Counted from the first letter of the stretch, positions 757 through 63,111 are shown. The stretch: 64,000 bases of DNA from IMGVR_UViG_3300044997_001199:124001-188000; one strand, 5' to 3'. Notes: generated from the letters alone by a model not told the origin. A program made the numbers and translations.

Positions 757-975
757 TCAGTTTCTCCGTACAATGCGTCCTCGTGTAAGGTCGTAGGCAG
801 AAAATTCCATTTCTACTTCGTCTCCTAGCAGTACCTTAATATTGTTCTGTCGCATACGACCACTGAGTGTTGCCAGTGCAATATGCTCGTGACCGTGTAG
901 TTGTACTCTAAACATCGCACTAGGCAACACATCTATGACCCGTCCAGTGGTTTTTAATACATCTTCTTTACCCAA
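757..975 (-). CDS. infA: Translation initiation factor IF-1
   Basis: GRVIDVLPSAMFRVQL...LSGRMRQNNIKVLLGDEVEMEFSAYDLTRGRIV; TTG start at 975 gives the canonical 72 aa. Confidence 0.96.
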   Translation of the reverse strand: MGKEDVLKTTGRVIDVLPSAMFRVQLHGHEHIALATLSGRMRQNNIKVLLGDEVEMEFSAYDLTRGRIVRRN

Positions 976-1300
976 GTGAAAATTCAATCCTCTTTAACCG
1001 ATCCCAACGGAAACTGCGCCATGCATCTTTCTCGCAATCCCATACCACACACACTTCGGGATTGGGAACATGTTCCGTGACAGTATTTACTCGTTTGGCT
1101 CCAAGTATTTCGGAAAGAGTACAAATCATGTGTTTGGCACTGCCATCAGATTTTTCAAATTCAACTGAAACCGCGGTTTCGGTCAACAGTGTGCGCAGCC
1201 AGGTCTTGAAGTCTTCGCGGTCCTGATCCGATGCCCGGCAGTAAAAATTGCCCGGGTCATCGGCCAGTTCTCTCCATGTCTGAGATTGTTCTGAGTTTAT
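968..1300 (-). CDS. WYL_2/DUF2693-like SH3 beta-barrel protein; apparent ATA start
   Basis: V-F-K-DG..K-M-CTL...V-VWD-EK-AWRSFRWDRL pattern; AAGGAG lies 6 nt upstream of ATA at 1300. Confidence 0.6.
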   Translation of the reverse strand: MNSEQSQTWRELADDPGNFYCRASDQDREDFKTWLRTLLTETAVSVEFEKSDGSAKHMICTLSEILGAKRVNTVTEHVPNPEVCVVWDCEKDAWRSFRWDRLKRIEFSLG

Positions 1301-1494
1301 TGCGATCTCCTTGACCACAAAAAGCAGGCCAACTAGCCAGAAACAGCAGTCGGTCCTACTCATTGAAAAATTCAAAATCCATGCAGTTGATTTCAATACG
1401 ATAGTTTATTTTTGGTCAACTGAATTGTCTTGTTTTCTTTTTATGCCTTCGATAGATTTATAAAATACCTATCATAATATGACCAATATAGATT

Positions 1495-1875
1495 TTATCT
1501 TCTCATTTTTGCAGCATCAATAGCCGATTGTTTGTCAAACACTGGTTGTAAACACGATTTGTGAAGTACAGTTACTCCAATACACTCTGTACCGGTATAC
1601 TGCTTGGCCGGTGATGCTGCAGCAGTGCCGCGACCGGTGTCCACACTAGGAATGCGAGGTCCGTTATCACGACGATAAGGACCTGGGTTGCCCGGCAAGC
1701 GCGTGACTGTGTCGGTGCGGACAGTGTTTGGTCTGATATCATACTTGTCTAGCAGTTGCTGCCAGGCGTCGCGATTCTTCCGTGCCTGTGCAGCAGCATC
1801 TGCAGTGCGGTATCGGCGACCGCCACGTTTTTTTCCAGTGGTAGTGAGCCAGGGGCCAACAAGGTGCATGGTCAT
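1495..1875 (-). CDS. Hypothetical phage protein (basic)
   Basis: ORF with SD GAGAG downstream of a sigma70-type promoter. Confidence 0.7.
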   Translation of the reverse strand: MTMHLVGPWLTTTGKKRGGRRYRTADAAAQARKNRDAWQQLLDKYDIRPNTVRTDTVTRLPGNPGPYRRDNGPRIPSVDTGRGTAAASPAKQYTGTECIGVTVLHKSCLQPVFDKQSAIDAAKMRR

Positions 1876-1902
1876 GTGCTATCTCTCGTGGTTGATTTGA
1901 GT

Positions 1903-1931
1903 ATTATACAAGAACCGGGTACAGCAGTCAA
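1903..1931 (-). promoter_or_regulatory. sigma70-type early promoter TTGACT-17-TATAAT
   Basis: Direct reading; 17-nt spacer. Confidence 0.85.
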
Positions 1932-2243
1932 TCACTTGAAGAAAATCATGGCTACTAGAGTCGCTTGCATCACAAAGCCTGCAGCAATGGTGGCGATTTG
2001 CAACAGGTTGCGTCGTACCAGGGACTGTAAAAACAGTGCCACCAGTCCTCCGTAGACCGGGAGCAGCATGTCCAGGGGCGGCATGCGATCACTGAGACCC
2101 GACAACAGAGACATGAGCATGGGCACAGTGCTGGCATGCAGCATGAGCACTGCCAGCCAGCCCAGAGTTTCTGCTGACACCAAATTCAACCCCTGCAGGA
2201 ACCGTTCAAAACCTTGCTTGACATCTATCATTGCTAATATCAT
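1932..2243 (-). CDS. Small multi-pass membrane protein
   Basis: Three hydrophobic segments; GAGGAGG SD before ATG 2243. Confidence 0.7.
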   Translation of the reverse strand: MILAMIDVKQGFERFLQGLNLVSAETLGWLAVLMLHASTVPMLMSLLSGLSDRMPPLDMLLPVYGGLVALFLQSLVRRNLLQIATIAAGFVMQATLVAMIFFK

Positions 2244-2256
2244 TGCTAATCCCTCC

Positions 2257-4907: not shown

Positions 4908-4931
4908 TGTGCTATCTCCTTTGGAATATGT

Positions 4932-14540: not shown

Positions 14541-14626
14541 TTCAGTCTCCTTAAAATTAAGCGAGGTTCACTACAACGAGACCTGCCCCATGCAGCATCT
14601 CATGCTGTCAGTGTAACAGTATTTAT
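14541..14626 (-). promoter_or_regulatory. Conserved leader copy A: late promoter + bulged-G hairpin + ROSE-like anti-SD
   Basis: ATAAATA..GAGAT-G-CTGC atggg GCAG-GTCTC..CTCGCTTAA tttt AAGGAG..ATG. Confidence 0.75.
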
Positions 14627-14648: not shown

Positions 14649-15434
14649 TTATTTTGGAGAAATCAAATCTGCGGACTGTGTCCAAGTCACGATTTCCCAA
14701 CGACCGTCCCAGTGTTCTACCAAGGCAGTCATTGACTCAACCCAGTCGCCGTCGTTCATGTAGATTACACCATCAATTTCTTTGATTTCTGCGTTGTGTA
14801 TGTGCCCACAGATCACGCCGTCAAACCCTCGCTTTTTACAGTAGCCGGCAAGATTCTTTTCAAACTGAAAAATAAAATCTATAGATTTTTTAACTCGTGT
14901 TTTGAGATATTTGCTTAAACTCCAGTAACCCAGTCCTAGTCTGCGTCTAAGAGCATTGAATCTACTGTTTAAGTCTAGCACAAAATCATACATCTTGTCA
15001 CCTAAAAAGGACAACCACGGGGCTAAACGAGTGATTCCGTCAAAAAGATCTCCATGAGTGACCAGATAATGTTTTCCGTCTAAACCAATGTGCTCGGTCT
15101 GATTGAAAACTTCAATCATACCAAAACCAATACCGTATGGAATCAATGGGCGAAGAAACTCATCGTGATTGCCTGCTACATACACAACGCGGGTTCCACG
15201 CTTGGCATGTCCCATTATACGTCTTACAACATTGGTATGGCTTTGTTTCCAGCGCCACTTGTTTTGTTGAATTTTCCACGCATCAATGATGTCACCAACA
15301 AGATAAAGTGTTTCACAGGTATTATGTTTGAGAAAATTATTTAACTGCTCTGCTCTGCAGTCGCGGGTTCCAAGATGTACATCACTGATGAATATGGCGC
15401 GATAGGTGGTCACTAGGTATTTAACCCGGCGCAT
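14649..15434 (-). CDS. LpxH/YbbF-like metallophosphoesterase (UDP-2,3-diacylglucosamine hydrolase family)
   Basis: ISDVHLG; LVGDIID; AGNHDEFL; THGD; CGHIH; NDGDWVES. Confidence 0.88.
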   Translation of the reverse strand: MRRVKYLVTTYRAIFISDVHLGTRDCRAEQLNNFLKHNTCETLYLVGDIIDAWKIQQNKWRWKQSHTNVVRRIMGHAKRGTRVVYVAGNHDEFLRPLIPYGIGFGMIEVFNQTEHIGLDGKHYLVTHGDLFDGITRLAPWLSFLGDKMYDFVLDLNSRFNALRRRLGLGYWSLSKYLKTRVKKSIDFIFQFEKNLAGYCKKRGFDGVICGHIHNAEIKEIDGVIYMNDGDWVESMTALVEHWDGRWEIVTWTQSADLISPK

Positions 15435-18857: not shown

Positions 18858-18931
18858 TGGTAGGCCCGAAGGGTAACGCTCCCTCTTCTACGGTTTAAAA
18901 GACCGTTGCTTCACTTTAAAGCTTCAAGCCC
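18858..18931 (-). tRNA. trnK: tRNA-Lys(UUU), non-canonical D and T loops, encoded CCA
   Basis: GGGCTTG-AA-GCTT TAAAGTG AAGC-A-ACGGT CTTTTAA ACCGT-AGAA-GAGGG AGCGTTA CCCTT-CGGGCCT-A-CCA folds as a cloverleaf. Confidence 0.88.
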
Positions 18932-23880: not shown

Positions 23881-23904
23881 GCGTTTTCCTTTTAAATAAG
23901 TGTT

Positions 23905-24696
23905 ATGCCACTTGCATTTGATTTGATTTCTGATTTACACGTTGAAACATGGTCCAAGATATTTAATTGGACTGGTCAGGCCACCAGTCCATTTTGTGTG
24001 GTAGTTGGAGATGTGGCGCAGGACCGCAATGTTTTGATAAAAACGTTAACACACCTTGGCAGTTGTTATCAAGCAGTTTTTTACATCGATGGCAATGACG
24101 AGCATCGTGACTATTACGACAATCTCAGTTCCAGTTACAATGACCTAGCCGCAAAACTCAAACCCGTACCCAATCTGGTGTATCTACAGAACAACGTAGT
24201 GGTAATCGAGGGAGTGGCCATCCTGGGTACCAACGGTTGGTGGGCCTTTAATTTTGATCTCAGTGTCGATTCGGGGTCGTCCGTAGAACTTTGGCAGGAC
24301 GAAACCGGACACGATCTTGCAGCTTCTCAATATATTTCGGCCATGGCCCAGAACGATGCCAACTATCTTGTTCGCAGCGTCAAGCGTTTGCAAAAACGCT
24401 ATGATGTCCGTCACATCGTGGTAGCTACACATACTGTGCCGGCGACGCAATTGCTTGCCCACGACATCGAGTTGAAATCAACTCCCAAACTCAACTGCAT
24501 GGGCAATCGATATCTCGAAGAAGCACTGGACTGCGATACCGAAAAAAAAATACATACCTGGTGCTTTGGACACTATCACAGACCGATAGATCAGATCTAT
24601 CGACAAATACGGTTTGTTAACAACTGTCGCGGAAAAGAGAAAACCGACTATGCCACGTCGGTTTTCTATCCCAAACGGATCGTGGTAGAAAACTAA
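23905..24696 (+). CDS. Calcineurin-like metallophosphoesterase
   Basis: ISDLH; VVGD; GNDEH; THTVP; WCFGHYH. Confidence 0.88.
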   Translation: MPLAFDLISDLHVETWSKIFNWTGQATSPFCVVVGDVAQDRNVLIKTLTHLGSCYQAVFYIDGNDEHRDYYDNLSSSYNDLAAKLKPVPNLVYLQNNVVVIEGVAILGTNGWWAFNFDLSVDSGSSVELWQDETGHDLAASQYISAMAQNDANYLVRSVKRLQKRYDVRHIVVATHTVPATQLLAHDIELKSTPKLNCMGNRYLEEALDCDTEKKIHTWCFGHYHRPIDQIYRQIRFVNNCRGKEKTDYATSVFYPKRIVVEN

Positions 24697-24998
24697 TCAG
24701 TGGATTCGGGTTCCAGTTTGATCTGCAAAGGGTAGCTCTGTTCTCTGGCACTGAGCGTGACTTCGATGCCTTTTTGTTCGGCAATCTCATAGGGCAACAC
24801 CGCGACCACGGCTGATCCAGACTCGTGAATGTCCAGAGTGATTTCTTTGGCTAGATTCACACTGTAATCAAAGTACTCTACTAGCGATTCAATCACAAAC
24901 TCCATGCTAGTGGCATTGTCATTGAGATAAATTACCCGATACATGGGGGGTTCAGTGACTTTTTCGTTGATACGAGTGCGGAATTCAATCTGTGACAT
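24693..24998 (-). CDS. clpS: ClpS adaptor
   Basis: EPPMYRVIYLND..TSMEFV...L...F; DIHESG.AVV; EIAEQK; YPL. Confidence 0.92.
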   Translation of the reverse strand: MSQIEFRTRINEKVTEPPMYRVIYLNDNATSMEFVIESLVEYFDYSVNLAKEITLDIHESGSAVVAVLPYEIAEQKGIEVTLSAREQSYPLQIKLEPESTD

Positions 24999-25014
24999 TT
25001 TATAATCCTTGTAT

Positions 25015-25045
25015 ATACAGTGGCGGACACTGTCCGCCACTGTAT
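25015..25045. repeat. Perfect 14-bp inverted repeat with 3-nt loop
   Basis: ATACAGTGGCGGAC-ACT-GTCCGCCACTGTAT. Confidence 0.9.
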
Positions 25046-25059
25046 TTAACAAAACACTG

Positions 25060-25497
25060 TCAAGAAGTGTAGGTAATTGCGATGCTCTTGGGTTTGGCCG
25101 ACTCAGGAACCAGGCGTTCCAATTGGATGGTCAAGATACCATCTCGGACCACCGCGGCCTTGATTTCAACATGGTCTGCCAGCATGAAACAACGAGAAAA
25201 CTTGCGAGTCGATATTCCCTTGTGCAAATATTCAACTCCGACCGATTCGGTTTTCTTTTCACCGGTCACTGTGAGTTCACCGTTGTGGAATGTGACATCA
25301 ATTTCGCCTTGACTGAATCCGGCCGCGGCCAGGCGGATTTCATAGGTTTCCTCTCCGGTCTTGACCACATCGTGCGGTGGATAGTTGCCAACCTGAGATG
25401 AATGCTCAAACTGGTCTAGGATACGGTCAAACAAACGATCCACGCCCACGGTGTGACGATAGAAAGGGGTCAAGTCTAATGCAGTAAGTTTTGTCAT
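25060..25497 (-). CDS. ibpA: Small heat shock protein Hsp20 (IbpA-like)
   Basis: VGVDRLFD; NYPPHDV; I.LA.AGF; L.VTG; YLHKGISTR.F.R.F.L; DGIL.I.L; P..I.I. Confidence 0.95.
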   Translation of the reverse strand: MTKLTALDLTPFYRHTVGVDRLFDRILDQFEHSSQVGNYPPHDVVKTGEETYEIRLAAAGFSQGEIDVTFHNGELTVTGEKKTESVGVEYLHKGISTRKFSRCFMLADHVEIKAAVVRDGILTIQLERLVPESAKPKSIAITYTS

Positions 25498-25565
25498 GAT
25501 AATCTCCTTTTAAGCAAGTATGACAACAGTAGACCCGGAAATCGGCATCTACTAGGATATTTATA
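25498..25565 (-). promoter_or_regulatory. Conserved leader copy B (hsp20)
   Basis: TATAAATA..TAGTAGAT-G-CCG atttc CGG-GTCTACTG..CTTGCTTAAAAGGAG..ATG. Confidence 0.8.
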
Positions 25566-27423: not shown

Positions 27424-27492
27424 AGTGTTCTCCTTGGTTAAGCAAGAATAAGTCGAGATCCCCGGAATGGGCAATCTCTAGTGCTATTTATA
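27424..27492 (-). promoter_or_regulatory. Conserved leader copy C (dnaK)
   Basis: TATAAATA..GAGATT-G-CCC attcc GGG-GATCTC..CTTGCTTAA cc AAGGAG..ATG. Confidence 0.8.
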
Positions 27493-27517
27493 GACAAAAT
27501 CTCAAATCAAGTCAAGC

Positions 27518-27742
27518 TCAATACAGGGTTTTAGGCAATTCTTGGCTAGCCAAATATCTACGCCAACGAGATTTGGCCGCGGATTTTTTGCGTTTTCTCA
27601 CCGAAGTGGGTTTTTCGTAGAACTCATATTTCCTGAGATCCATGAGTATGCCCGAAGTCTGGACCTTTTTTTTGAATTTACGCAGTGCTTTTTCAACGTT
27701 TCCGTCGTTGACAAACACTCTGCGACCATTTAATTCACTCAT
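27518..27742 (-). CDS. rpsU: 30S ribosomal protein bS21
   Basis: V.V.DGNVEKALRKFKKKV..SGIL.DLR..EFYEKPTSVRKRKK.AA..R. Confidence 0.93.
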   Translation of the reverse strand: MSELNGRRVFVNDGNVEKALRKFKKKVQTSGILMDLRKYEFYEKPTSVRKRKKSAAKSRWRRYLASQELPKTLY

Positions 27743-28943: not shown

Positions 28944-30421
28944 TGATTGTGCTTGCCAAGTCGATTGGAAATTTGTTCGGTTTCCGCTGCAGTGAGGAAG
29001 TCAGGATCATACTGACCCTGTTCCAACTGTTGGATAAGATGGTCGATATAGGCATCGTTGTATGTATAACTATCGGCGATCTGCTTGCTGATTTCGATCC
29101 AGTCGTTTTCATTGTATCGATAGAGAACGTGCGGGATCCGATCGGTACGTATCCATAGATCGCCCTTGACTGCATGTTCGGGGAATCGGTTTCCGAATCC
29201 AGTGCCAAGAGTCGGTTCCGGCAAGTCATCAGTGACCAGCGACATCCATGGCAGTTGATCGATTAGACCTTGTTCATATCGATGGCGTTGGTCCTTGAGA
29301 GTTCTTCCGGGATTGGCCTGTTTCCAGAGACGCATGGCTTCTTTGACTTTGTTGTCGTGGTGACCGAACTCGTCGTCGGCAGACTCAGCATCGTCCAGTA
29401 AACGATCCATTGGGTGTTCGTGCTCCACAATAACCAATGTTTCCTGGGTCTGGTTCTCTGTGTCCGCCGTGGTCTCAGGAACATAGACTATCGGGCCCAC
29501 TGGATCAACTCCGGGTACATGATGTTTCCATTCTTTTTGGAGGTAATCATGCGTGACTGTTTGTTCGATCGATGAATCTTGAGCAGTTTCTTGTGGGCTC
29601 GGGTCTGCAGACTCTGCTAGGTCCGACACAGCGGCGTCGAGAGACTGCGATTGAGTCAGTTGTCGTTCACGTTCCCATCCATGGCTTTCGGTGAACGCCA
29701 ACAACATCATTATGGCCAGGGGATCAAATACCATAACCAAGACTATGATCACCCATCGCACTGCTTTTTCCAGGACATTCACTTCAGGGTTGTCACCATA
29801 GACCAGAGCAGCAATATATTTGATTGGGCCGACTTCGGCTTCTACTTTTCTCAATTCACTGGCTATGGGAGCACGCTGTTCATTGAGGTCAGCGATTATC
29901 GACTGTGCCTGGGCAATTTCTCGTTGCAGTCTTACACGCTCGGCTTGTTGTTGTCTGCGTATCTGCACTGCACGTTCTGCACCGCGATCATCATTGCTGC
30001 GACTCAGACGTTCGTTGACCTGGCTGTCCATCTGTTGAACAGAGGTCTTGGCCGCAGCAATGTTATCCTGTTGGGTGCGTATTTTTTCGTCAATCAGATC
30101 GACCTGGGCAGCAACGTCGCCGGTGGGTACTGCCTGGTCCAGATGTGCCTTTGACAAAAATCCAAAAATACCCATGGATGTTATGATCATGAGTAGGATC
30201 ACTGCTGGTACTAGATAGGCTTTCATGGTCCATCGCACACGATGCCAGTACTCATGTAGCCAGACCGTGATTGCGAGTTTGGCTATTTCTAAAATGGTGC
30301 CCATGACCGCTATGGGCACTGTGGCCGCGGCAAATATAGCCGTGAGACCGGCTATGGAGTAAAAGGCTGCGATACCGCTGAGGCTCAGGGCCACGGCCAG
30401 GACAATATATGTTAGAAACAT
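28940..30421 (-). CDS. Membrane-anchored coiled-coil protein
   Basis: Three N-terminal TMs, long coiled coil, EVGPIKYIA, further TM, acidic tail. Confidence 0.75.
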   Translation of the reverse strand: MFLTYIVLAVALSLSGIAAFYSIAGLTAIFAAATVPIAVMGTILEIAKLAITVWLHEYWHRVRWTMKAYLVPAVILLMIITSMGIFGFLSKAHLDQAVPTGDVAAQVDLIDEKIRTQQDNIAAAKTSVQQMDSQVNERLSRSNDDRGAERAVQIRRQQQAERVRLQREIAQAQSIIADLNEQRAPIASELRKVEAEVGPIKYIAALVYGDNPEVNVLEKAVRWVIIVLVMVFDPLAIMMLLAFTESHGWERERQLTQSQSLDAAVSDLAESADPSPQETAQDSSIEQTVTHDYLQKEWKHHVPGVDPVGPIVYVPETTADTENQTQETLVIVEHEHPMDRLLDDAESADDEFGHHDNKVKEAMRLWKQANPGRTLKDQRHRYEQGLIDQLPWMSLVTDDLPEPTLGTGFGNRFPEHAVKGDLWIRTDRIPHVLYRYNENDWIEISKQIADSYTYNDAYIDHLIQQLEQGQYDPDFLTAAETEQISNRLGKHNQ

Positions 30422-30782
30422 AGTACTCTATTTATTGCTCGTCCTTGAGCATCCATGTTTCAATCTCTGCTGTTCAGTACCCAACCCAACTGCCATGGAT
30501 CTTGGACAATGTTGTCTGTGACAGGTCCTTCGGTCACGTAGCTTGATATCTGGGAATCTGGTGTATTGTCGATCTTTTCTATTGAGTCTGTGCCCGAGCA
30601 ATACTAATCAATATAGTCGCCTTCGAGCCTTATGTCGTATACAATACCACCCGCATAGTGCCAGGAACACGATCAACGCCGATTACAGTTATAGCAGGAA
30701 ATACAGATCAGTGCAACCGTTGGCTGTGTGTGGTTGACTGTTTTGTGTCTGAGTCAGTTGACTCAGCGTTCATACCGTGGAT

Positions 30783-38867: not shown

Positions 38868-38874
38868 TTTTTCC

Positions 38875-39300
38875 TTAGGTAATGCGTTTGACAATATCTT
38901 GTTGGGTGACACTGCGTTTAGTGGTCGGACGATCTGGGCAGATATTTACGATGGTATCTGCTTCCCAATTAAGTGCATATTTTTCTTTATGCAGCAGGAC
39001 TAAATTGTCCGCACCCACTTCAACCAATTTCGCATCCACGATGTCATTTCTTTCTAACATTGCTAGAGTATACATGATTCCCAAGCCTCTAGCAACATTG
39101 CAATATATGTTGTCCTGCAATAGTTGCCAGGGATTTGGCCATTCCCGCCGATCGTCCCAGTGTAGGTAGTAGGTGGTCCACGGGGCCCGGAACCACCAGT
39201 GATTCACACGGGCGAGACAGGATTCTAACTCAAGATCTAAGACCGTGGCACGTAGTTGTGCCCAGTCCGTGAGTCTGGACGTGAAATCAGTGTGCCACAT
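38875..39300 (-). CDS. Hypothetical protein, possible transglutaminase-like Cys motif
   Basis: WP.PWQLL..N.YC.VARG. Confidence 0.6.
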   Translation of the reverse strand: MWHTDFTSRLTDWAQLRATVLDLELESCLARVNHWWFRAPWTTYYLHWDDRREWPNPWQLLQDNIYCNVARGLGIMYTLAMLERNDIVDAKLVEVGADNLVLLHKEKYALNWEADTIVNICPDRPTTKRSVTQQDIVKRIT

Positions 39301-43126: not shown

Positions 43127-44239
43127 TTATCTGCGAGCTCGACCCAGCGTGCCTTTGGTGCCCATGGACTTTCCGTCAGCAGGCTCTTCCGTGTCCAGAT
43201 CAGTGTCCACAGCAAGGTCCATGCTGTTGTCAGGAGGCATGGACATGTTGGTGTTGCCGGCGTCCATGGCTGCGTCCAAGGTCGGCGTCGCTGGCTGTTG
43301 TCCTGTGACAATCCCCAAGGCCACTTCCAACTGTTGTTTGGCAGCCTGTAGGTTTTTTACTAGACCAGTCAGTGCCGCAGTGGCATCGGTATTGAATTGA
43401 TTGGCCTGATCCATGCCGGTTTGGTTACGTATAGAATCTACCAAGGCCGGTAATTCTTTGAACTGCATCTCAGTGGTGTCCTCCAGCATGCCTTGCATCT
43501 TGTCTACCATGTCCTGAGCGGCCAGCACTACCTGTGCTTGCTGCACTTCGCTTTCGTTGAGAGTGCGATAGGCACTGCGCAGGCGGTTTTCTTGTTGCAT
43601 CAACGCAGCACTGACCACGAGTTTTTGTTCGTCGGGGCTGAGGGTTTGACCACTCTGGCTCTTCTTGAGCGCAGCAGCCAATTTGGGATCCTTGACGTTG
43701 ACCGCAGGCTTGGCAGCAGCAGGCTTGGCCGCGGCCGAACCTGATGATTGGGCAGAGGTAGCCGCACCTGTGGTAGGTACCATTTCTTCACGGATTTCTT
43801 GTTGCATCAACGCAGCACTGACCACGAGTTTTTGTTCGTCGGGGCTGAGGGTTTGACCACTCTGGCTCTTCTTGAGCGCAGCAGCCAATTTGGGATCCTT
43901 GACGTTGACCGCAGGCTTGGCAGCAGCAGGCTTGGCTGCGGCCGAACCTGATGATTGGGCAGAGGTAGCCGCACCTGTGGTAGGTACCATTTCTTCACGG
44001 ACTCGACTGGCCAACGCAGTTTCCATCACTACCAACTTGAGATATGCCGGGTCCTGCTCACGAAAATGATGAATCACAGTTTGTTTGTGTTCTTGCATGA
44101 GACCCCGCACGCGATCTAACATCTGGCAGGCCTGGCGCAGCGTCAGCTGGTCAAATGCGATACGAGTCCCAAAGTGATTTTCAAATACCTTGGTAGCATG
44201 GCACACTGGATCAGACGCAGCGAGTTCTTGCAGTTTCAT
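43127..44239 (-). CDS. Probable prohead core/scaffolding protein with 69-aa internal duplication
   Basis: MKLQEL leader; coiled-coil, Ala/Gln-rich; L-x-E sites. Confidence 0.6.
   Translation of the reverse strand: MKLQELAASDPVCHATKVFENHFGTRIAFDQLTLRQACQMLDRVRGLMQEHKQTVIHHFREQDPAYLKLVVMETALASRVREEMVPTTGAATSAQSSGSAAAKPAAAKPAVNVKDPKLAAALKKSQSGQTLSPDEQKLVVSAALMQQEIREEMVPTTGAATSAQSSGSAAAKPAAAKPAVNVKDPKLAAALKKSQSGQTLSPDEQKLVVSAALMQQENRLRSAYRTLNESEVQQAQVVLAAQDMVDKMQGMLEDTTEMQFKELPALVDSIRNQTGMDQANQFNTDATAALTGLVKNLQAAKQQLEVALGIVTGQQPATPTLDAAMDAGNTNMSMPPDNSMDLAVDTDLDTEEPADGKSMGTKGTLGRARR
43588..44001. repeat. 207-bp tandem duplication (206/207 identical)
   Basis: Units 43588-43794 and 43795-44001; single difference C43730/T43937. 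Confidence 0.95.
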
Positions 44240-44687
44240 TTTGGAATCCTCTAAGTTGTAAGTATTTAGTCAGTGAGATACATTTTTCTAACTGGTTGTT
44301 GATCTGTGCACGATAAAGATTTTTGGCCTGCAGTTTGGTCAGTACTCGATCGCGAAACTGCGGTTGTGAGCTGTGCAGTGCCAATTTTTTTCTTGCTTCG
44401 CAGTCTTGTTCAACAGTCGAATGTTGCTGATCCAGCATGGCGATGCTAGCGGCAAGATCGTGCCGTTGGAGATTTTTGGCCACGCACCAACTCAGTGCCA
44501 CTCGGCGATCGCTGAAATCGCCGAGCACATTGCTCATCGCCAACACACGACAACCATGTTTGGTAGGCCGCAGGGTGAATTTACCAAACGCTATCACGTC
44601 ACGGCCGTCACCGGGCACTATGATCTGACCAAGATATCGGTTCAGTTCGCGCTCGGCCCAGTGCTGTATTCGAGAATCTACATTCAT
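44211..44687 (-). CDS. Hypothetical late protein
   Basis: Coupled ORF. Confidence 0.65.
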   Translation of the reverse strand: MNVDSRIQHWAERELNRYLGQIIVPGDGRDVIAFGKFTLRPTKHGCRVLAMSNVLGDFSDRRVALSWCVAKNLQRHDLAASIAMLDQQHSTVEQDCEARKKLALHSSQPQFRDRVLTKLQAKNLYRAQINNQLEKCISLTKYLQLRGFQNETARTRCV

Positions 44688-44950
44688 AGAGTCCTGACGT
44701 ACTGACTTGTCAACCAACCAATCACTGCCAGCAATACGCCGATGAGGCTGACCCCCCAGCCTATGAGTTGACTGTTGTGCTTTTCGGACATCGAGGTCAC
44801 CATGTCAGCCACTTCCTTGACCAGGCGCTCCATGCTCGTGAGTTTTTCCTCCACGGTTTCCAGTTTGAGTTCCAGCATCTTGTAACGCTCGGCACAAAGT
44901 TCCACGTGTGCTTCAAGGCTCTTTTTTTCTATGTCGCGAGTATCGCTCAT
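44684..44950 (-). CDS. Coiled coil + C-terminal TM protein (XhlA/holin-like topology)
   Basis: LELKLETVEEKLTSME heptads; GWGVSLIGVLLAVIGWL. Confidence 0.6.
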   Translation of the reverse strand: MSDTRDIEKKSLEAHVELCAERYKMLELKLETVEEKLTSMERLVKEVADMVTSMSEKHNSQLIGWGVSLIGVLLAVIGWLTSQYVRTL

Positions 44951-44951
44951 G

Positions 44952-45374
44952 TCAAATCTCCGTTAACGTATTTACCGATTGGAACCAAATATTGCGGTCA
45001 GGATCCTGGATCGACACAACAGATTTTACCCCGGGCGATTCGTCCAGGTTAGTGATCATAGGAATACCCTCGCAGTCGCGATATAGATCTTCCAATTCTG
45101 AGCCACCAAACACTCCGTCATTTTCAACAGTAAATTCAAAACACCAGTGAGTGTCAATCTTGACCGGCACAGAAATGTCCTGCGGTTGGCATCTCAATCC
45201 GATGATTTGCAGCAAGGTTTCCCAGTTGCGCTGTTGATTTCGACTGCGATTCCAAGACTGCTGACCATCCACTAGGTTTCCGTTTCGATCACGGAATGGA
45301 ATCTGCGCGACACGGTAGTGGCCAATCACGCCTGTGGCTGCACAGTCAAACAGAGTTTTGCATCGAAATCGCAT
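44952..45374 (-). CDS. Hypothetical late protein
   Basis: ATG 7 nt after TAAATA box. Confidence 0.65.
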   Translation of the reverse strand: MRFRCKTLFDCAATGVIGHYRVAQIPFRDRNGNLVDGQQSWNRSRNQQRNWETLLQIIGLRCQPQDISVPVKIDTHWCFEFTVENDGVFGGSELEDLYRDCEGIPMITNLDESPGVKSVVSIQDPDRNIWFQSVNTLTEI

Positions 45375-45392
45375 GGCAAGATATTTAACGGC

Positions 45393-45423
45393 AAACAAAA
45401 ACCCCGGATTTTTATATCCGGGG
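45393..45423 (-). terminator. Strong rho-independent terminator
   Basis: CCCCGGAT-N6-ATCCGGGG then TTTTTGTTT on minus strand. Confidence 0.85.
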
Positions 45424-45447
45424 TCATTGTGCAACTGCTGACAACTA

Positions 45448-45846
45448 TTACGATGTGGCTAACTTGAAACCAACACTGGCAGCCGAATCCAGTTGGAAGC
45501 CAGTGTAAGTCACATTGGCAGCCGACAGCAGAGTTGCGGCGTTGGCATATGCGCCGGCAGGGTAGATGCCCAGCGACAAGCGTGTTCCGTCGACTTGATA
45601 GAAAGCCAGGGTCGAAGTCTGTTGCACTGCTTGCAGAACGGCAGCAACGTAACCGTTGGCCGAACCGATCACACCCTGTTGTGTGGCCATGGTAGCATTA
45701 GCGGTAAGCGAGAAGAAGTCTAGCTTGGGACCGGCCATGTTGACCGGAGTACCGGCAGTGGCCGTGGTAGGAGCGATATGACCGTTTTGTACGTCGATCG
45801 CAAATACTGGTTGTGCATCACCATTTACACGAGTTAATGAAGCCAT
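45448..45846 (-). CDS. Probable abundant virion structural protein
   Basis: Own TAAATA promoter, AAGGAG SD, own terminator; Ala/Thr/Gly-rich. Confidence 0.7.
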   Translation of the reverse strand: MASLTRVNGDAQPVFAIDVQNGHIAPTTATAGTPVNMAGPKLDFFSLTANATMATQQGVIGSANGYVAAVLQAVQQTSTLAFYQVDGTRLSLGIYPAGAYANAATLLSAANVTYTGFQLDSAASVGFKLATS

Positions 45847-45914
45847 TTTGTTTCTCCTTGATATATGGGGATTGACCCCTACTGTTATTTAGCGCCCGGA
45901 CCAAAAATCAAAAC

Positions 45915-47792: not shown

Positions 47793-48517
47793 ATCTTGCC
47801 CTGTCTACGCAACGTGGCAATAATCTGTGCGTTTTTGGGGTCAGCCGGATCCAACATTTCTCCTCCTATGGAAATCTGACCACCGGACTGTACTGTGACC
47901 CGAGGAGCTCCAGCCCGTTGGCGGCGCGGAGGCGACTGAAATGTTGCTAGGCTAGCTATGGTATAAAGTTTTTCTGCAGTGGTTTGCCACAAGCGAGAAA
48001 GTTTGGCCTGCTGAGCGTTTGAAGGTTCTGTGGCCACTGTGGCCAGTATGGTACCCATCGCGGTTTCCAGTTCTCGAACTGCATCAAGAGCTACTTTTGC
48101 TCCTTTGCCGCCATAGGCCTGAGGGTCGACCAATTTTGAAATTTCTCGGTAATCTTGTAATTCATCGTTGGACATCTTGTTCAGCGTGGAATTAAGTTGT
48201 GACACCAGGACACGCTTCAGTTGATCTCGAGGTATGTCCTTGACGCTGGTCACTCCGCGAGAACTGTAGGCTTGTGTCATGGCCTGTTGTATGGCCTGGC
48301 TCCACCCTGCATTGAGACTCTGTGCTATCTGATTGACCAGGGGCGCACTGGCTTGTGCGGCCCGACTTTGGGGATCAATGGCGAATCCCGGTGCATTTGA
48401 AGGTTGCGTGATACCTGCGGTACCGGCCTTCTGCGCCAGACGATTGACCGCACCTTGAAGGAACGATGATTGTGCACCTGGGTTGGTAAAGACATTGACA
48501 ATTTCATTGATCAGCAT
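47789..48517 (-). CDS. Probable internal head protein
   Basis: MLINEI leader; Gln/Ala-rich. Confidence 0.55.
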   Translation of the reverse strand: MLINEIVNVFTNPGAQSSFLQGAVNRLAQKAGTAGITQPSNAPGFAIDPQSRAAQASAPLVNQIAQSLNAGWSQAIQQAMTQAYSSRGVTSVKDIPRDQLKRVLVSQLNSTLNKMSNDELQDYREISKLVDPQAYGGKGAKVALDAVRELETAMGTILATVATEPSNAQQAKLSRLWQTTAEKLYTIASLATFQSPPRRQRAGAPRVTVQSGGQISIGGEMLDPADPKNAQIIATLRRQGKI

Positions 48518-48752
48518 GCACTCTCCTCACTGATCTGATGAATTTGCCTGGTTCTTTCATGCGCATGGCATTGAGAAGTTTGCGAGTGAGAATTTCTGCC
48601 TGCTCGGGAGAATATTCAGACTCGATCTGTTCGATCAAGCGTATGGCAGCATCAATGAGATTGTTGGCTCGGCTTTCGATCAAAAGCCGGCGGTCACGCT
48701 CGACGTAGAGGCTGTCCAGTTCTTCTAGTATGCTGCGAGTCTTTTTTTGCAT
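48504..48752 (-). CDS. Conserved hypothetical protein (MQKKTRSILEEL...)
   Basis: TAAATA box upstream; intact 82 aa. Confidence 0.75.
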   Translation of the reverse strand: MQKKTRSILEELDSLYVERDRRLLIESRANNLIDAAIRLIEQIESEYSPEQAEILTRKLLNAMRMKEPGKFIRSVRRVHADQ

Positions 48753-48826
48753 GTGATAGATCTTGGTGTATTATTTAGCGGCATGGCTTTTTCAATAAAT
48801 ATCTACTAGATGAGCAAGGATCACCA

Positions 48827-51823: not shown

Positions 51824-51946
51824 ATGCAGAAAAAGACTCGCAGTCTACTTGAAGAACTTGATGCCATGTACGTCCATCGCGACCGGCGCCATGTGATCGA
51901 AAGCCGCGCAGCCAATCTATTGCTATACAGTTACGTTGATGGTTAG
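51824..51946 (+). pseudogene. 5' stump of a paralog of 48504..48752
   Basis: MQKKTRSLLEELDAMYVHRDRRHVIESRAANL then unrelated LLYSYVDG*; own TAAATA box at ~51796. Confidence 0.88.
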
Positions 51947-57600: not shown

Positions 57601-57601
57601 G

Positions 57602-60105: not shown

Positions 60106-60147
60106 GTTGTTATTTTACAAGAACGTTGCCGATAACACAACAGTAGG

Positions 60148-61605
60148 TCATCTCCATTCTAGCCTTTCCTGTGAAAATGGATATTGTGCGTCGCGATAGT
60201 AGGCCTTGCGCTTGGTCAAATGTCGTTTGGCGAACCTACACGTGGAGGTTATATCCCAGATCTCCACGTGGTCCTTGTCTTCGGCTTTTCGAATACCGCG
60301 GCCAATCGACTGAATAACTCGGACAAAACTCTTGCCAGGCTCCACGAGCACAAGATTAAAAATACGAGGAATATTGATACCAACAGCAGCAACCCCATAT
60401 GTAGCGACGATAATTTTGTCGCTAGCCTCTGAAACTTCGTCATAGTGATCTCGTCTTTCGGCTGATTTTGTAGACCCTGATATGAATACTGCGTTCGGTA
60501 ATTTACTTACCAGAGCTTCGCCGGCGGCGATTCGATCTACCAAGATCAGGGTATTGCCTGTGTTCTTGACCTTGTTGACCAAATCAGCAATGGCGTCGAG
60601 TCGGCCGGGTTCTTCGAGCAGATACTTGAGTTCGCTTTGATAGTTGGAAAATTCAACGGAATCCACCAGTTGCACGACATTGACATGACACTGTGCCAAC
60701 ACTCCGCGACCCTGCAGTTCGGCAGCGGCCAACCTGGACACCACTGGCCCCAGACTTACCAACAATGACTGACTCTCAAATGCTTCTTTGGGTATGGTGC
60801 CTGTGAGTCCCCAACGCATGGGCACTTGACTCATCACCCCGGTGAGCAGGCTTTTGAGCGCGTCGGCCTTGGCCATGTGCACTTCGTCCACGATCACACA
60901 GATCACGTTTTCTAAAAATTCTTGTATGGTAATAAGTGCAGTCTGATTGCGTGTGTTTTTCAGCAACACATTGAGACTCTGCCAGGTGCAGATGGTATGT
61001 TGATGTCCAAACTCTTTGCGGTCACCAAAAAACACTCCTACGTCAAGGCCAAGATTACGATAATCTACCTCGGTCTGCGTGACCAGACTTTTGTTAGGAA
61101 CGATCACGATGCTACGTCCGTACTGCCCTGCGGCATCACTTAGCGCAGCGGTCATGATGGTTTTGCCTGCACCTGTGGCCACTTCCTGCACACACTGCGG
61201 GTTAGCCAGAAAGTTGTTGATGATTTCAATCTGATAATCGCGTAGTAATATGGCCTGACCTGCGGCAGGGTGTCCCTTGGGCCATGTCCGGTCTTGGTAT
61301 GTGGTTTCAACTACTGAGTTAAATTCAAAAGTAGTGCGGTAGTTTCGTTGGTCGTCTAGTTCTATGTCGTACCCATCCTCTTCCAATATGGGCAGTATGT
61401 CGGGCAAGAGATTTACGTAGGTACTGCCGCCCAATTGAAAATAGGCTACCTTGCCATCCCAGCGTCCTAACCGCACTGCGGGCAAATAGCGGGCATATGG
61501 CACATCATATTTGAATCGATTGACCAACCGACGACGCGTATCAAGGTCCAGACCTTCTAATTTGATGTTGACTTCGTCGCGGATAATCAGTTGAGCTTTT
61601 TTCAT
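60148..61605 (-). CDS. uvsW: SF2 DNA helicase, UvsW-like
   Basis: LRDYQ; ATGAGKT; VDEVH; GLTGT; ATYG.AAVGINIP; QSIGRGIR. Confidence 0.92.
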   Translation of the reverse strand: MKKAQLIIRDEVNIKLEGLDLDTRRRLVNRFKYDVPYARYLPAVRLGRWDGKVAYFQLGGSTYVNLLPDILPILEEDGYDIELDDQRNYRTTFEFNSVVETTYQDRTWPKGHPAAGQAILLRDYQIEIINNFLANPQCVQEVATGAGKTIMTAALSDAAGQYGRSIVIVPNKSLVTQTEVDYRNLGLDVGVFFGDRKEFGHQHTICTWQSLNVLLKNTRNQTALITIQEFLENVICVIVDEVHMAKADALKSLLTGVMSQVPMRWGLTGTIPKEAFESQSLLVSLGPVVSRLAAAELQGRGVLAQCHVNVVQLVDSVEFSNYQSELKYLLEEPGRLDAIADLVNKVKNTGNTLILVDRIAAGEALVSKLPNAVFISGSTKSAERRDHYDEVSEASDKIIVATYGVAAVGINIPRIFNLVLVEPGKSFVRVIQSIGRGIRKAEDKDHVEIWDITSTCRFAKRHLTKRKAYYRDAQYPFSQERLEWR

Positions 61606-61631
61606 GTACTGAAGCTTAACATGATTTCCTT

Positions 61632-62516
61632 TTAGGCACGATCAATTTGGATTGTTTTAAGACACTGGTGTTGAGAAATCTGCCGGAATATCTCATCTTG
61701 TTCTGCAGATTGATCAAGTTTAGCTATAGTAATTCCACCTAGACTGAGACGTTTGGTGGGTTTTTCATATCCCAGCTTGGCGAAAAACTCCCTATGTTGA
61801 GCAAAATACTTCCAGATTCTTTGTTCAACCTCGGAATGCTGTTGAAAAGACTGGTCAGTGAATCTCACCGTAAAATCAAAACAATAATGACGCTGAGGAA
61901 CAAAAGCATCTTCGCTTATCCATTGGTCGTCGTCGTGCCAGAGGTCGTATAAGTTTTTTCCAATTTCACAGTAATTTAATCTAAGATCTCCCCATTCTTC
62001 GTGTAAAGAAAAATGCTGATAATCCTCTGGCAGCAGTTCATCGCGATAGGGTTTGTGTTTCCAGGTGGCTACAAATCTTGGAATCCCCCCCAGCGTTTCA
62101 TACCGATGTATCCAGATGTTAAGGTCTCCCAAGGCTACTTGTACCGGCACAGGGGCATTACGAAAAAATTCATTGTTGTCTTGCTGATCATACAATCCAT
62201 GATACCGTTCAAAGATATGGTGCAGGTAATTAAGGTCATCTCGGCTGAGAGTTTCACCTATGTCGCGGTCTATGATATCGGGCGAATAATCTCGGATTGT
62301 CGCCACGAGATGTTTTAAATGCTGGATTGTTTCTTTGTGACCATAACGACCGTGCGGAAAATTGTAAAATCTTAAGGAATCATCCCATGGTTGCCCGGCA
62401 TCAATAAAATATTGGAGATGTTTGAGCCAACGGTCGGCGATGCCAATGGGCAGAAGATCAAACCGTAAATCATAATTATCTATTCCGTTGGTAAGCGTGA
62501 TAAGTACCTGAGTCAT
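61632..62516 (-). CDS. Conserved hypothetical protein
   Basis: 294-aa ORF; YCEIGK.L.DL..D.D motif. Confidence 0.7.
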   Translation of the reverse strand: MTQVLITLTNGIDNYDLRFDLLPIGIADRWLKHLQYFIDAGQPWDDSLRFYNFPHGRYGHKETIQHLKHLVATIRDYSPDIIDRDIGETLSRDDLNYLHHIFERYHGLYDQQDNNEFFRNAPVPVQVALGDLNIWIHRYETLGGIPRFVATWKHKPYRDELLPEDYQHFSLHEEWGDLRLNYCEIGKNLYDLWHDDDQWISEDAFVPQRHYCFDFTVRFTDQSFQQHSEVEQRIWKYFAQHREFFAKLGYEKPTKRLSLGGITIAKLDQSAEQDEIFRQISQHQCLKTIQIDRA

Positions 62517-63111
62517 GCATACCTCTTTTGTTCAACTAAATTTGTCAGGATCATGGTGTAATGAATGGCCCACTCTCCGGGTTCGGGGCAATGAAACTAT
62601 TTATTTTGACGGTAGTGTGATAGACAATATCAGTATCGAGTTTTCAATGCCGTTGAATGCTCTGAACACGTTGGAAATTGAACATTACGGAAAGTCCTTC
62701 GGCGAAAACGGACGTTGGGATACGCTGGTCGAGGATGGTCAAATCACGCAGGACCGCGCTGTAAAAATCAATCACATCTGCCTGGACGAGGTAGATCTCA
62801 TCGATTACCTATTTAAAAACTTTCCCATGAAAGTTGGTCAAGAAACCATTAGTACCGATTACATGGGCCACAACGGCGTCATTTCGATTGCATTTGAGTC
62901 TCCGGTGTACAATTGGATTATTAAAACTTTCGTGGCCCCAAAAGAAAGAAACAAACCCACTTTTGATCTGGTAGTAGAAACCAGCTTTGGCAACCTGTTT
63001 GATTATTCGCAGGACCTATTAGAGATAGAAGAAATTGAAAACATTCTGATCCAAAATGCACATCTCATTGATAAACCTTCCGCGATTCGAAATACACCGG
63101 CCGCCTCTTAG
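62515..63111 (+). CDS. Hypothetical protein
   Basis: TAAGTA 8 nt upstream of ATG; coupled to downstream radical SAM. Confidence 0.65.
   Translation: MHTSFVQLNLSGSWCNEWPTLRVRGNETIYFDGSVIDNISIEFSMPLNALNTLEIEHYGKSFGENGRWDTLVEDGQITQDRAVKINHICLDEVDLIDYLFKNFPMKVGQETISTDYMGHNGVISIAFESPVYNWIIKTFVAPKERNKPTFDLVVETSFGNLFDYSQDLLEIEEIENILIQNAHLIDKPSAIRNTPAAS

What the first reader, a model, noticed from the sequence alone, without database searches (positions are those of the whole stretch)
757..62517. Near-leaderless late genes alongside phage IF1 and bS21
Several genes start only 6-8 nt after a TAAATA/TAAGTA box with no SD (23905, 30421, 45374, 62515), and divergent pairs leave no room for leaders (62514-62517 share CATG as both start codons; 22222/22226 are 3 nt apart). 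T4-type late promoters initiate a few nt downstream of the box, so these mRNAs would be essentially leaderless, whereas sigma70-driven early genes have strong AAGGAG SDs. The phage also encodes two 30S initiation components, IF1 and bS21. Inference: it retunes initiation for a two-class mRNA system.
Basis: partly seen in the sequence, partly recalled or inferred. Interest (0 to 1): 0.6.

Follow-up and report, generated by a model that had tools for sequence, protein, structure and literature searches.

The report
Leaderless genes in a jumbo phage
In this uncultured jumbo phage (relatives about 345 kb) and its close relatives, roughly half of the genes sitting directly behind a T4-like TAAATA promoter box begin only 4-8 bases after it, so their messages should have no ribosome-binding leader.

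Summary
The sites are as described. TAAATA lies 6-7 nt before the ATGs at 23905, 30421 and 45374. IF1 (757-987, minus strand) and bS21 (27518-27742, minus strand) are genuine.

The window alone is not significant (4 matches against 1.4 expected). The 215-kb contig is: TAAATA is the most enriched hexamer upstream of genes, and box-to-ATG spacing is bimodal, at 4-7 nt without SD or 17-30 nt with SD. Orthologues in IMG/VR keep the adjacent box in 65/66, 51/52 and 41/41 distinct loci. In the last set a terminator sits immediately upstream of the box.

T4 numbering puts the A of the ATG at about +1. Complete relatives encode a gp55-like sigma. T4, PA5oct, Phosso, Atu_ph07 and GAP32 use the same box but only with SD-containing leaders, so the leaderless class is specific to this clade.

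The retuning idea is not supported:
- Phosso has IF1 and bS21 but no adjacent class.
- PA5oct and Atu_ph07 have bS21 but no adjacent class.
- TAAATA also drives SD-led genes.
- Some sigma70-type promoters in a relative also abut ATGs.

No transcript data could be obtained.

The parts
23893..23907 (+). TAAATA box (23893-23898), 6-nt spacer and ATG of a metallophosphoesterase gene (23905-24696). Leaderless candidate.
   Evidence: first start codon of the ORF; phrog_1649; 51 of 52 distinct orthologous loci keep the box, 50 of them at 6 nt.
30419..30434 (-). TAAATA box (30434-30429), 7-nt spacer and ATG 30421 of a 493-aa predicted membrane protein (28940-30421). It heads the run 493-aa gene, ClpX, bS21. 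Leaderless candidate.
   Evidence: 65 of 66 distinct orthologous loci keep the box 4-9 nt (44 at 5 nt) before the conserved MFLS N-terminus, while the flanks diverge.
45372..45425 (-). Intrinsic terminator (hairpin 45425-45402, T-run to 45392), TAAATA box (45387-45382), 7-nt spacer and ATG 45374 of a 140-aa gene (44952-45374). Leaderless or near-leaderless candidate.
   Evidence: all 41 distinct orthologous loci have hairpin + T-run, box, 6-8 nt, ATG, with compensatory stem changes.
15411..15423 (-). TAAATA box (15423-15418), 4-nt spacer and GTG 15413 of a phosphoesterase-like gene (14649-15413). Leaderless candidate with a non-ATG start.
   Evidence: the G001 orthologue has TAAATA + 4 nt + ATG and the same N-terminus.
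62501..62517 (+). TAAGTA (62501-62506), 8-nt spacer and ATG 62515 of a 198-aa gene. Unverified variant box.
   Evidence: Variant only weakly enriched. No relatives found.
757..987 (-). IF1 (infA-like). The likely start is TTG 975 (72 aa, LGKED aligned to MAKED), overlapping the stop of the upstream WYL_2 gene. Its stop is 1 nt before the ATG of a Fe/Mn superoxide dismutase gene (198-755).
   Evidence: PF01176, 65 bits.
27518..27742 (-). bS21, 74 aa. Its ATG overlaps the end of clpX, with an AAGGAG 13 nt upstream. No box of its own here.
   Evidence: PF01165, 65 bits. In G001 it has its own TAAATA 23 nt upstream plus an SD.
25498..25563 (-). TAAATA box (25563-25558) followed by a ROSE-like two-hairpin leader and an SD, before the HSP20 gene (25060-25497). 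SD-led class, and an independent marker of where the transcript starts.
   Evidence: ROSE_3, 35.7 bits, below gathering 43, E 4e-5, whole model. HSP20; hairpin conserved in 51 relatives, first pair 4-5 nt after the box.
27424..27490 (-). TAAATA box (27490-27485) and a 61-nt leader with UUGCUUAA..AAGGAG before DnaK (25561-27423). SD-led class.
24998..25048 (-). TAAATA box (25048-25043), a hairpin leader, an AAGGA SD and an ATG near 24998 of ClpS (ends 24693). SD-led class.
   Evidence: for the G001 counterpart.
44240..44268 (-). TAAATA box and a 23-nt leader with AGAGGA before a 370-aa gene (43127-44239). SD-led class.
44951..44974 (-). TAAATA box and an 18-nt leader with GGAG before an 88-aa gene (44684-44950). 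SD-led class.
45847..45891 (-). TAAATA box and a 39-nt leader with AAGGAG before a 132-aa gene (45448-45846). SD-led class.
48753..48826 (.). Divergent intergenic region with two back-to-back TAAATA boxes: 48777-48772 on the minus strand, 19 nt before ATG 48752, and 48796-48801 on the plus strand, 25 nt before ATG 48827.
38913..38948 (-). TAAATA box 30 nt before the called GTG start of the ribonucleotide reductase large subunit (36546-38912).

Best explanation
The window comes from a 215-kb fragment of an uncultured myovirus whose complete relatives are about 345 kb. It belongs to the PA5oct / Atu_ph07 / Rak2-like supergroup. Its DnaK is closest to Burkholderiales, so the host is probably a betaproteobacterium.

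TAAATA is the core of a T4-type, gp55-dependent promoter: a -10-like element with no -35. In T4 numbering the box ends at -6, so RNA starts about 6 nt downstream. In this clade about half of the genes directly behind such a box have their ATG 4-8 nt after it (mode 5). The A of the ATG is then at or within about 3 nt of +1, and these mRNAs are leaderless or nearly so and must be translated without an SD. The other half have 17-30 nt or longer leaders carrying an SD, some with regulatory hairpins.

The adjacent class is an innovation of this clade. It is fixed gene by gene and is not restricted to structural genes. A similar arrangement exists at some sigma70-type promoters of a complete relative. 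IF1 and bS21 are real phage genes, but they are older acquisitions shared with relatives that have only SD-led late genes. They are not needed to explain the architecture.

Shown: motif enrichment, spacing, lack of SD, conservation, and gp55-like genes in relatives. Inferred: the transcription start, the timing, and the mode of translation.
For: Motif and spacing:
- TAAATA is the top upstream hexamer: 48/101 copies, P 1e-41. It has no flanking conservation.
- Spacing is bimodal.
- In 15 of 23 adjacent cases the codon is the first possible start of the ORF and was picked by a caller blind to the box.
- The adjacent class has no SD; the 10-45 nt class has an SD in 61-78%.

Relatives in the clade:
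- The same pattern holds in the 97%-complete relative G001: 35/138, P 2e-13.
- Five more relatives that are at least 91% complete show 28-43 matches against 6-21 in the reversed control.
- Class is conserved between orthologues: 17 of 21, Fisher P 8e-14.
- Orthologue series: 65/66, 51/52 and 41/41.
- Terminator-box-ATG is conserved in all 41 loci of the third series.
- The ROSE-like leader hairpin starts 4-5 nt after the box in 49/51 relatives.

Promoter type:
- gp55-like (phrog_234, E 1e-23) is present in all three relatives that are at least 90% complete (plus a 72%-complete one) and in PA5oct.
- T4 box = -13..-6 (PMC2988020).
- An ATAAATA late-promoter motif and a gp55-like gene are reported in CBB and GAP32 (PMC5259590).

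Outgroups:
- Starts at 3-9 nt versus 17-30 nt after TAAATA: PA5oct 5/30, Phosso 1/27, Atu_ph07 3/36, GAP32 0/21.
- T4 boxes sit 13-30 nt upstream, with an SD.

Context:
- 9 of 23 adjacent genes sit at divergent junctions. The box TAA is the upstream stop codon in only 1.
Against: - No transcript 5' ends: no RNA run was listed.
- The focal contig itself has no detectable gp55, gp33 or gp45. It is 61% complete.
- gp33 and gp45 were not found in complete relatives either, though the control for those searches rang nowhere.
- Four adjacent starts in the focal contig are GTG and one is TTG. These work poorly on leaderless mRNA in E. coli.
- Spacers of 7-8 nt may leave a 1-3 nt leader rather than none.
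- My gene caller is home-made and its start calls for unboxed genes are noisy.
- Late timing is assumed by analogy with T4.
Confidence: 0.72

Rival explanations
1. The phage runs two mRNA classes, sigma70-driven early mRNAs with an SD and late leaderless mRNAs. Its own IF1 and bS21 retune 30S initiation to favour the second class.
For: - IF1 and bS21 are present and conserved in all three relatives that are at least 90% complete.
- IF1 is rare in phages: 35 of 50,697 records. It is absent from PA5oct, which lacks the adjacent class.
- IF1 stimulates leaderless translation in vitro (PMC9031893).
- phiYS40 is a precedent for leaderless middle/late mRNAs combined with a shifted IF2/IF3 balance (PMC3594737).
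- In G001 most strong sigma70-type promoters carry AAGGAGCC leaders, and bS21 has its own TAAATA box.
Against: - Phosso has IF1 and bS21 but 1 adjacent start against 27 leadered ones. Atu_ph07 and PA5oct have bS21 without the class.
- About half of TAAATA-proximal genes are SD-led.
- Five or six sigma70-type promoters in G001 abut ATGs, so some leaderless messages would precede any phage-made factor.
- From established knowledge, bS21 promotes SD-dependent binding, and ribosomes lacking it still translate leaderless mRNA.
- Some betaproteobacteria already have up to about 10% predicted leaderless genes (PMC3160421).
Confidence: 0.12
2. TAAATA close to the ATG acts on the RNA, not as a promoter. 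It would be an A/U-rich ribosome landing site, or a stop codon (TAA) followed by re-initiation, on transcripts that start further upstream.
For: - The box contains TAA. In G001 the IF1 stop is the TAA of the box before the SOD gene.
- 11 of 37 adjacent genes in G001 lie within 15 nt of an upstream same-strand gene.
Against: - The box TAA is the upstream stop in only 1 of 23 and 3 of 37 cases. 9 of 23 lie at divergent junctions.
- The same hexamer sits 17-30 nt upstream with an SD in between, in this and five other phage groups.
- A terminator directly precedes the box at 45374 in 41/41 loci.
- The exact hexamer is needed; A/U-rich variants are not enriched.
Confidence: 0.08
3. The adjacent ATGs are not the real starts. 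Translation begins at downstream SD-led codons, so the transcripts have ordinary leaders.
For: This is true for some look-alikes:
- ClpS, called at GTG 25040 but really starting at an ATG near 24998.
- Two sigma70 cases in G001 with an internal SD plus ATG.
Against: - Orthologue alignments start at residue 1 on both sides for most adjacent genes.
- N-terminal residues are conserved (MFLS..).
- The ATG position relative to the box is fixed across 41-66 diverged loci, while third codon positions and flanks vary.
Confidence: 0.05

Closest known systems
T4 late transcription (TATAAATA box, gp55 sigma, gp33, gp45 clamp)
   Same: A -10-type A/T box with no -35. It is used on both strands and ahead of virion genes. 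The core TAAATA is identical. gp55 homologues are present in complete relatives.
   Different: Only the hexamer is conserved. No gp33 or gp45 was detected. T4 boxes lie 13-30 nt before the ATG with an SD, and no adjacent class exists there. Here boxed genes also include chaperones, RNR and phosphoesterases.
ATAAATA putative late promoters of Rak2-like jumbo phages (CBB, GAP32; PMC5259590), and the same box in PA5oct, Atu_ph07 and Phosso
   Same: Same motif, enriched upstream of genes in all of them. These are the nearest cultured relatives; TerL is 43-54% identical.
   Different: Those phages have only leaders of 17 nt or more. The 3-9 nt class is 0-5 genes there, against 17-24 in this clade.
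Thermus phage phiYS40 (leaderless middle/late mRNAs, host IF2 up and IF3 down; cited in PMC3594737) and the '-10 region adjacent to ORFs' of Deinococcus-Thermus (PMC12340547; PMC3160421)
   Same: A -10-type element a few bp before the start codon, giving leaderless mRNA. phiYS40 is also a precedent for a phage that shifts initiation-factor balance.
   Different: Those hosts are themselves rich in leaderless genes (35-46%). Here the host is probably a betaproteobacterium, a group where SD-led genes dominate. The promoter is gp55-type, and no factor link is supported.
Ribosomal protein bS21 and IF1 encoded by huge phages (PMC7162821)
   Same: The same two families, in a phage longer than 200 kb. 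That paper proposes they intercept host initiation.
   Different: No N-terminal extension of note on this bS21 (74 aa). Function is untested anywhere. Here their distribution does not follow the leaderless architecture.
Jumbo phages with mapped 5' ends (phiKZ, PMC8244752; AR9, PMC5312081)
   Same: Large phages with their own promoter classes.
   Different: No leaderless transcript was found in phiKZ. AR9 UTRs are 26-491 nt. Both use phage RNA polymerases rather than a gp55-type sigma.

Membership tests
T4-type (gp55-dependent) late promoter system | A/T-rich -10-type box matching TATAAATA, with no -35 element | tested here: met
   Exact TAAATA is 17-fold enriched upstream of starts. No other conserved column from -25 to +14. 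Single-base variants are not enriched or only weakly so.
T4-type (gp55-dependent) late promoter system | gp55-family sigma encoded by the phage | tested here: inconclusive
   Not found in the 61%-complete focal contig. Found (phrog_234, E 1e-23) in all 3 relatives that are at least 90% complete, in a 72%-complete one, and in PA5oct.
T4-type (gp55-dependent) late promoter system | gp33 co-activator and gp45 sliding-clamp activator | tested here: inconclusive
   phrog_254 and phrog_223 gave no hit in the focal contig or in 6 related genomes. In some searches the control genomes rang nowhere. The CBB paper also reports none (PMC5259590).
T4-type (gp55-dependent) late promoter system | Late, replication-coupled timing | not testable with these tools
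   No expression data.
Leaderless mRNA | Transcript 5' end at, or within a few nt of, the start codon | not testable with these tools
   No RNA run listed. Indirect support: the modal 5-nt spacer equals +1 in T4 numbering (PMC2988020), a terminator lies directly upstream, and the UTR hairpin starts 4-5 nt after the box.
Leaderless mRNA | -10-like signal about 10 bp upstream of the start and no SD (the in-silico criterion of PMC3160421) | tested here: met
Leaderless mRNA | AUG start codon | tested here: met
   18 of 23 (focal) and 33 of 37 (G001) adjacent starts are ATG. The exceptions are GTG or TTG, for example 15413.
IF1 (PF01176) | Full-length S1-like OB domain scoring above the Pfam gathering score | tested here: met
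   65.1 bits against a cut-off of 30.2, profile positions 3-64 of 64.
Ribosomal protein bS21 (PF01165) | Domain scoring above the Pfam gathering score | tested here: met
   65.1 bits against a cut-off of 27.
ROSE RNA thermometer (Rfam ROSE_3, RF02523) | Score at or above the Rfam gathering threshold | tested here: not met
   35.7 bits against 43. Not listed at gathering threshold.
ROSE RNA thermometer (Rfam ROSE_3, RF02523) | 5' UTR of a small heat-shock gene, with UUGCU facing the SD in the last hairpin | tested here: met
   HSP20 lies downstream. CUUGCUUAA..AAGGAG is conserved in 51 relatives, and hairpin 1 shows compensatory changes.

The most novel reading that the evidence does not exclude
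In this clade IF1, acquired earlier (Phosso also has it), served as a pre-adaptation. With extra IF1 (and perhaps bS21) present, 5'-AUG messages are translated efficiently in an SD-dependent betaproteobacterial host. That would have allowed about 10% of the genes, at both gp55-type and sigma70-type promoters, to lose their leaders. The phage would then use leaderless initiation as a private channel that escapes host or phage shut-off of SD-led translation.
Probability: 0.12. Interest if true: 0.8.

Novelty: new variant of a known kind. Interest (0 to 1): 0.5.

Why it matters
T4-type late promoters and leaderless mRNAs are each well known. A whole clade of abundant environmental jumbo phages in which the two are fused, gene by gene and stably over about 50% protein divergence, has not been described in the literature I could search. 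The jumbo phages with mapped 5' ends there (phiKZ, AR9) show no leaderless messages.

It matters in three ways:
- It gives a clean natural system, with sister groups that lack the feature, for asking how leaderless messages are translated in an SD-using proteobacterium.
- It warns that SD-based gene callers will misplace about 10% of starts in these genomes.
- It provides a comparative argument against reading phage IF1 or bS21 as markers of leaderless translation.

Tried and rejected
- Near-identity search in GenBank phages: no match.
- RNA runs: none was listed, so read laying was not used and no 5' end could be mapped.
- gp55, gp33, gp45 and RegA by PHROG profile and by phmmer with the T4 proteins and the PA5oct gp55-like protein: nothing in the focal contig.
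- Window-only statistics: not significant.
- Relatives of the 62515 gene: none found, so the TAAGTA site stays open.
- Rfam at gathering threshold: only a tRNA-like hit. The DnaK leader gave no ROSE hit even at E up to 5.
- Terminator upstream of adjacent boxes as a general rule: rejected. It is convincing only at 45374.
- Stop-codon re-initiation as the general explanation: rejected.
- GTG 25040 as a leaderless start: rejected.
- The PA5oct omics paper reports only sigma70-like promoters.
- The phiYS40 primary paper is not held; I cite it through a review.
- One literature search with 'anywhere' matching was swamped by 'macrophage'.
- Only genetic code 11 was used.

Full report
WHAT THE WINDOW IS. 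The window is bases 124001-188000 of a 215,330-bp IMG/VR virus record that CheckV rates 61% complete. It has no near match among GenBank phages. Its large terminase is 53% identical to that of Pseudomonas jumbo phage PA5oct, about 50% to Sinorhizobium phage Phosso and Agrobacterium phage Atu_ph07, and about 44% to Rak2-like phages such as GAP32 and CBB. The contig carries a tail sheath, a terminase, virion proteins and a family-B DNA polymerase.

The window itself encodes:
- DnaK, ClpX, DNA ligase, both RNR subunits, glutaredoxin, a DnaB-like helicase and a primase;
- an HSP20 protein, ClpS and an Fe/Mn superoxide dismutase.

DnaK is 68-74% identical to DnaK of Burkholderiales and other betaproteobacteria. 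I take this as a hint, not proof, of the host group. Hundreds of related IMG/VR contigs exist, including complete genomes of 316-364 kb.

THE OBSERVATION. In the window alone, TAAATA-N4-7-ATG occurs 4 times against 1.4 expected, which 9 of 100 shuffles reach. So the window by itself proves nothing.

I called genes on the whole contig with a codon-usage caller that knows nothing about upstream motifs:
- TAAATA is by far the most enriched hexamer in the 50 nt before starts: 48 of its 101 copies, 17-fold, P 1e-41.
- Nothing around it is conserved, so there is no -35.
- The distance from box to ATG is bimodal. One sharp group lies at 4-7 nt: 26 of 101, against 9.5% for permuted boxes, P 2e-6. A broad group lies at 17-30 nt, where an SD sits in between.
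- In 15 of the 23 adjacent cases the codon is the very first start codon of the ORF.
- The adjacent class has no SD-like pairing; it scores below random sequence. The distant class has one in 61-78% of cases.

CONSERVATION.
- The 97%-complete relative G001 (349 kb) shows the same picture: 35 of 138 boxes, control 5.9%, P 2e-13.
- Five further genomes at least 91% complete give 28-43 matches against 6-21 for the reversed pattern.
- Between the focal contig and G001, proteins are 43-80% identical and intergenic DNA has diverged. Even so, 17 of 21 adjacent-class genes keep the class (Fisher P 8e-14).
Gene 30421 keeps the box 4-9 nt before the conserved MFLS start in 65 of 66 distinct loci. Gene 23905 keeps it in 51 of 52, with 50 at exactly 6 nt. 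Gene 45374 keeps it in 41 of 41.
- In that last series a GC-rich hairpin with a T-run, showing compensatory stem changes, ends 12 nt before the box in every locus. Transcripts from upstream stop there, and the gene's message must begin between terminator and ATG.

WHERE TRANSCRIPTION SHOULD START. In T4 the 8-bp late box occupies -13 to -6 (PMC2988020, which gives A(-13) as the variant first base). The hexamer therefore ends at -6 and +1 is the sixth base after it. A 5-nt spacer, the mode here, puts the A of the ATG at +1. Spacers of 6-8 nt give a leader of 1-3 nt, or +1 on the A if the polymerase picks the purine.

An independent marker agrees. The HSP20 gene at 25497 has a box 60 nt upstream. 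The interval matches Rfam ROSE_3 over the whole model, below the gathering score (35.7 against 43 bits, E 4e-5). In 51 relatives its first hairpin is kept with compensatory changes and begins 4-5 nt after the box in 49 of them. That is what one expects if the RNA starts there.

WHO READS THE BOX. The focal fragment has no detectable gp55, gp33 or gp45. All three relatives that are at least 90% complete, a 72%-complete one, and PA5oct encode a gp55-family protein (phrog_234, E 1e-18 to 1e-23). gp33 and gp45 were not found in any of them (weak test), as reported for CBB (PMC5259590). That paper also describes ATAAATA as the putative late promoter of CBB and GAP32. TAAATA does not fit a sigma70 -10 element, because it lacks the T at -7 (my reading). 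I conclude it is a gp55-type promoter core. That it is 'late' is by analogy only.

IS THE ADJACENT CLASS SPECIAL? Yes. In T4, perfect boxes sit 13-30 nt before the ATGs with an SD in between. I ran the same caller on PA5oct, Phosso (400 kb), Atu_ph07 (400 kb) and GAP32. TAAATA is among the top upstream hexamers in all of them. Starts at 3-9 nt versus 17-30 nt after the box number 5/30, 1/27, 3/36 and 0/21, against 17/19 and 24/28 in the focal contig and G001. The virion gene next to the terminase is adjacent-class here (genome position 37673). It has a 23-nt leader in PA5oct. So the supergroup shares the promoter, and this clade alone fused it to start codons.

THE INTERPRETATION. The leaderless inference stands, with the caveat that no 5' end was seen. 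The rest does not.

1. TAAATA is not tied to leaderless genes; about half of its first genes are SD-led. In the window these include DnaK, sHSP, ClpS, RNR and the genes at 44239, 44950, 45846 and 48827.
2. Adjacent-class genes are a mixture: virion proteins, two metallophosphoesterases, a radical-SAM protein, an ATP-dependent protease and a membrane protein heading the ClpX-bS21 run.
3. G001 has a very uniform sigma70-type promoter (TTGACC-N17-GCTATAAT). But five or six such promoters have an ORF-opening ATG exactly 6 nt after TATAAT with no SD. Leaderless messages would thus also be made before any phage factor exists.
4. Distribution: the focal clade has IF1 and bS21. Phosso has both but no adjacent class. 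PA5oct and Atu_ph07 have bS21 only. GAP32, XbC2 and T4 have neither. The factors are therefore older than, and uncoupled from, the architecture.
5. From established knowledge, bS21 helps SD-dependent binding. IF1 does stimulate leaderless translation in vitro (PMC9031893), so a helper role for IF1 cannot be excluded. I give the retuning model about 0.12.
6. The 'no room for leaders' argument for divergent pairs is wrong. 62516(-) has an SD and a box 81 nt upstream inside the opposite gene. The neighbour of 23905, if it starts at ATG 23880(-) (an ORF), has an SD that is the complement of the conserved TTTCCTTT next to the 23905 box (read).

DETAILS ON THE TWO FACTORS. IF1 most likely starts at TTG 975, giving 72 aa with LGKED aligned to the MAKED of the G001 copy. 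That start overlaps the stop of the upstream WYL_2 gene, and the IF1 stop is 1 nt before the SOD gene's ATG, so the gene is translationally coupled on both sides. In G001 it starts at an ATG 7 nt after a TAAGTA whose TAA ends the upstream gene. bS21 overlaps the end of clpX. In G001 it has its own TAAATA 23 nt upstream with an SD. In the focal genome that box is mutated, and bS21 would be read from the 30421 promoter.

COMPARISON AND VERDICT. A -10 element abutting the ORF is the accepted signature of leaderless genes (PMC3160421). It is common in Deinococcus-Thermus (PMC12340547), and Thermus phage phiYS40 makes leaderless middle/late mRNAs (PMC3594737). T4-type promoters are textbook. Phage IF1 and bS21 are known (PMC7162821). 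What seems new is the combination and its sharp phylogenetic boundary: a gp55-type promoter fused to start codons across an abundant clade of proteobacterial jumbo phages, with sister groups that lack it. phiKZ and AR9, the jumbo phages with mapped 5' ends that I found, have no leaderless transcripts (PMC8244752, PMC5312081). I rate it a new variant of a known kind, of moderate interest, resting on strong comparative evidence but no direct transcript evidence.

Noticed in passing
window 25498-25563(-), 27424-27490(-), 14541-14625(-): ROSE-like RNA-thermometer leaders (hairpin, then CUUGCUUAA facing AAGGAG) lie between a TAAATA box and the phage's HSP20, DnaK and a 73-aa gene. The HSP20 leader matches Rfam ROSE_3 below threshold and is conserved, with covariation, in 51 relatives. 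This would make the phage's chaperone genes heat-responsive.
   Followed up: partly
window 24693-30421(-): A proteostasis cluster on one strand: 493-aa membrane protein, ClpX, bS21, DnaK, HSP20, ClpS. bS21 is embedded between clpX and dnaK and overlaps the clpX stop.
   Followed up: partly
window 18861-18931(-): Rfam calls a tRNA here (41.8 bits against a gathering score of 29; anticodon loop CUUUUAA, so apparently UUU/Lys) that ARAGORN did not report. The T-loop looks atypical.
   Followed up: no
G001 (L099-L116), e.g. positions 123350, 206671, 233322, 240400, 329580: Canonical TTGACC-N17-(GC)TATAAT promoters with an ORF-opening ATG exactly 6 nt after TATAAT and no SD. These are leaderless candidates in the presumed early class. 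In the focal contig a DnaJ-like gene (genome position 95497, minus strand) has TATAAT + 7 nt + ATG.
   Followed up: partly
window 198-1318(-): IF1 lies between a WYL_2-domain gene and an Fe/Mn superoxide dismutase gene. Its probable TTG start overlaps the upstream stop, and its stop lies 1 nt before the SOD ATG. In G001 the IF1 stop codon is the TAA of the TAAATA box of the SOD gene.
   Followed up: partly
window 48504-48752(-) and 51824-51946(+): Two paralogous small ORFs beginning MQKKTRS.LEELD, of 82 aa and a truncated 40 aa. Each has a TAAATA box 19-21 nt upstream and they lie on opposite strands.
   Followed up: no
window 24998-25048(-) and G001 near 202455: The ClpS leader is a perfect 10-bp hairpin starting right after the TAAATA box. 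The hairpin is conserved in G001 with a different stem sequence. It may be a regulatory or stabilising 5' structure.
   Followed up: no
L016, L030, L037, L040, L047, L059, L076, L084 (upstream of the HSP20 leader): In some relatives a TATAAT overlaps the TAAATA box (TATAATAAATA), and a second TAAATA lies about 35 nt further upstream. This suggests dual promoters for the heat-shock gene.
   Followed up: no
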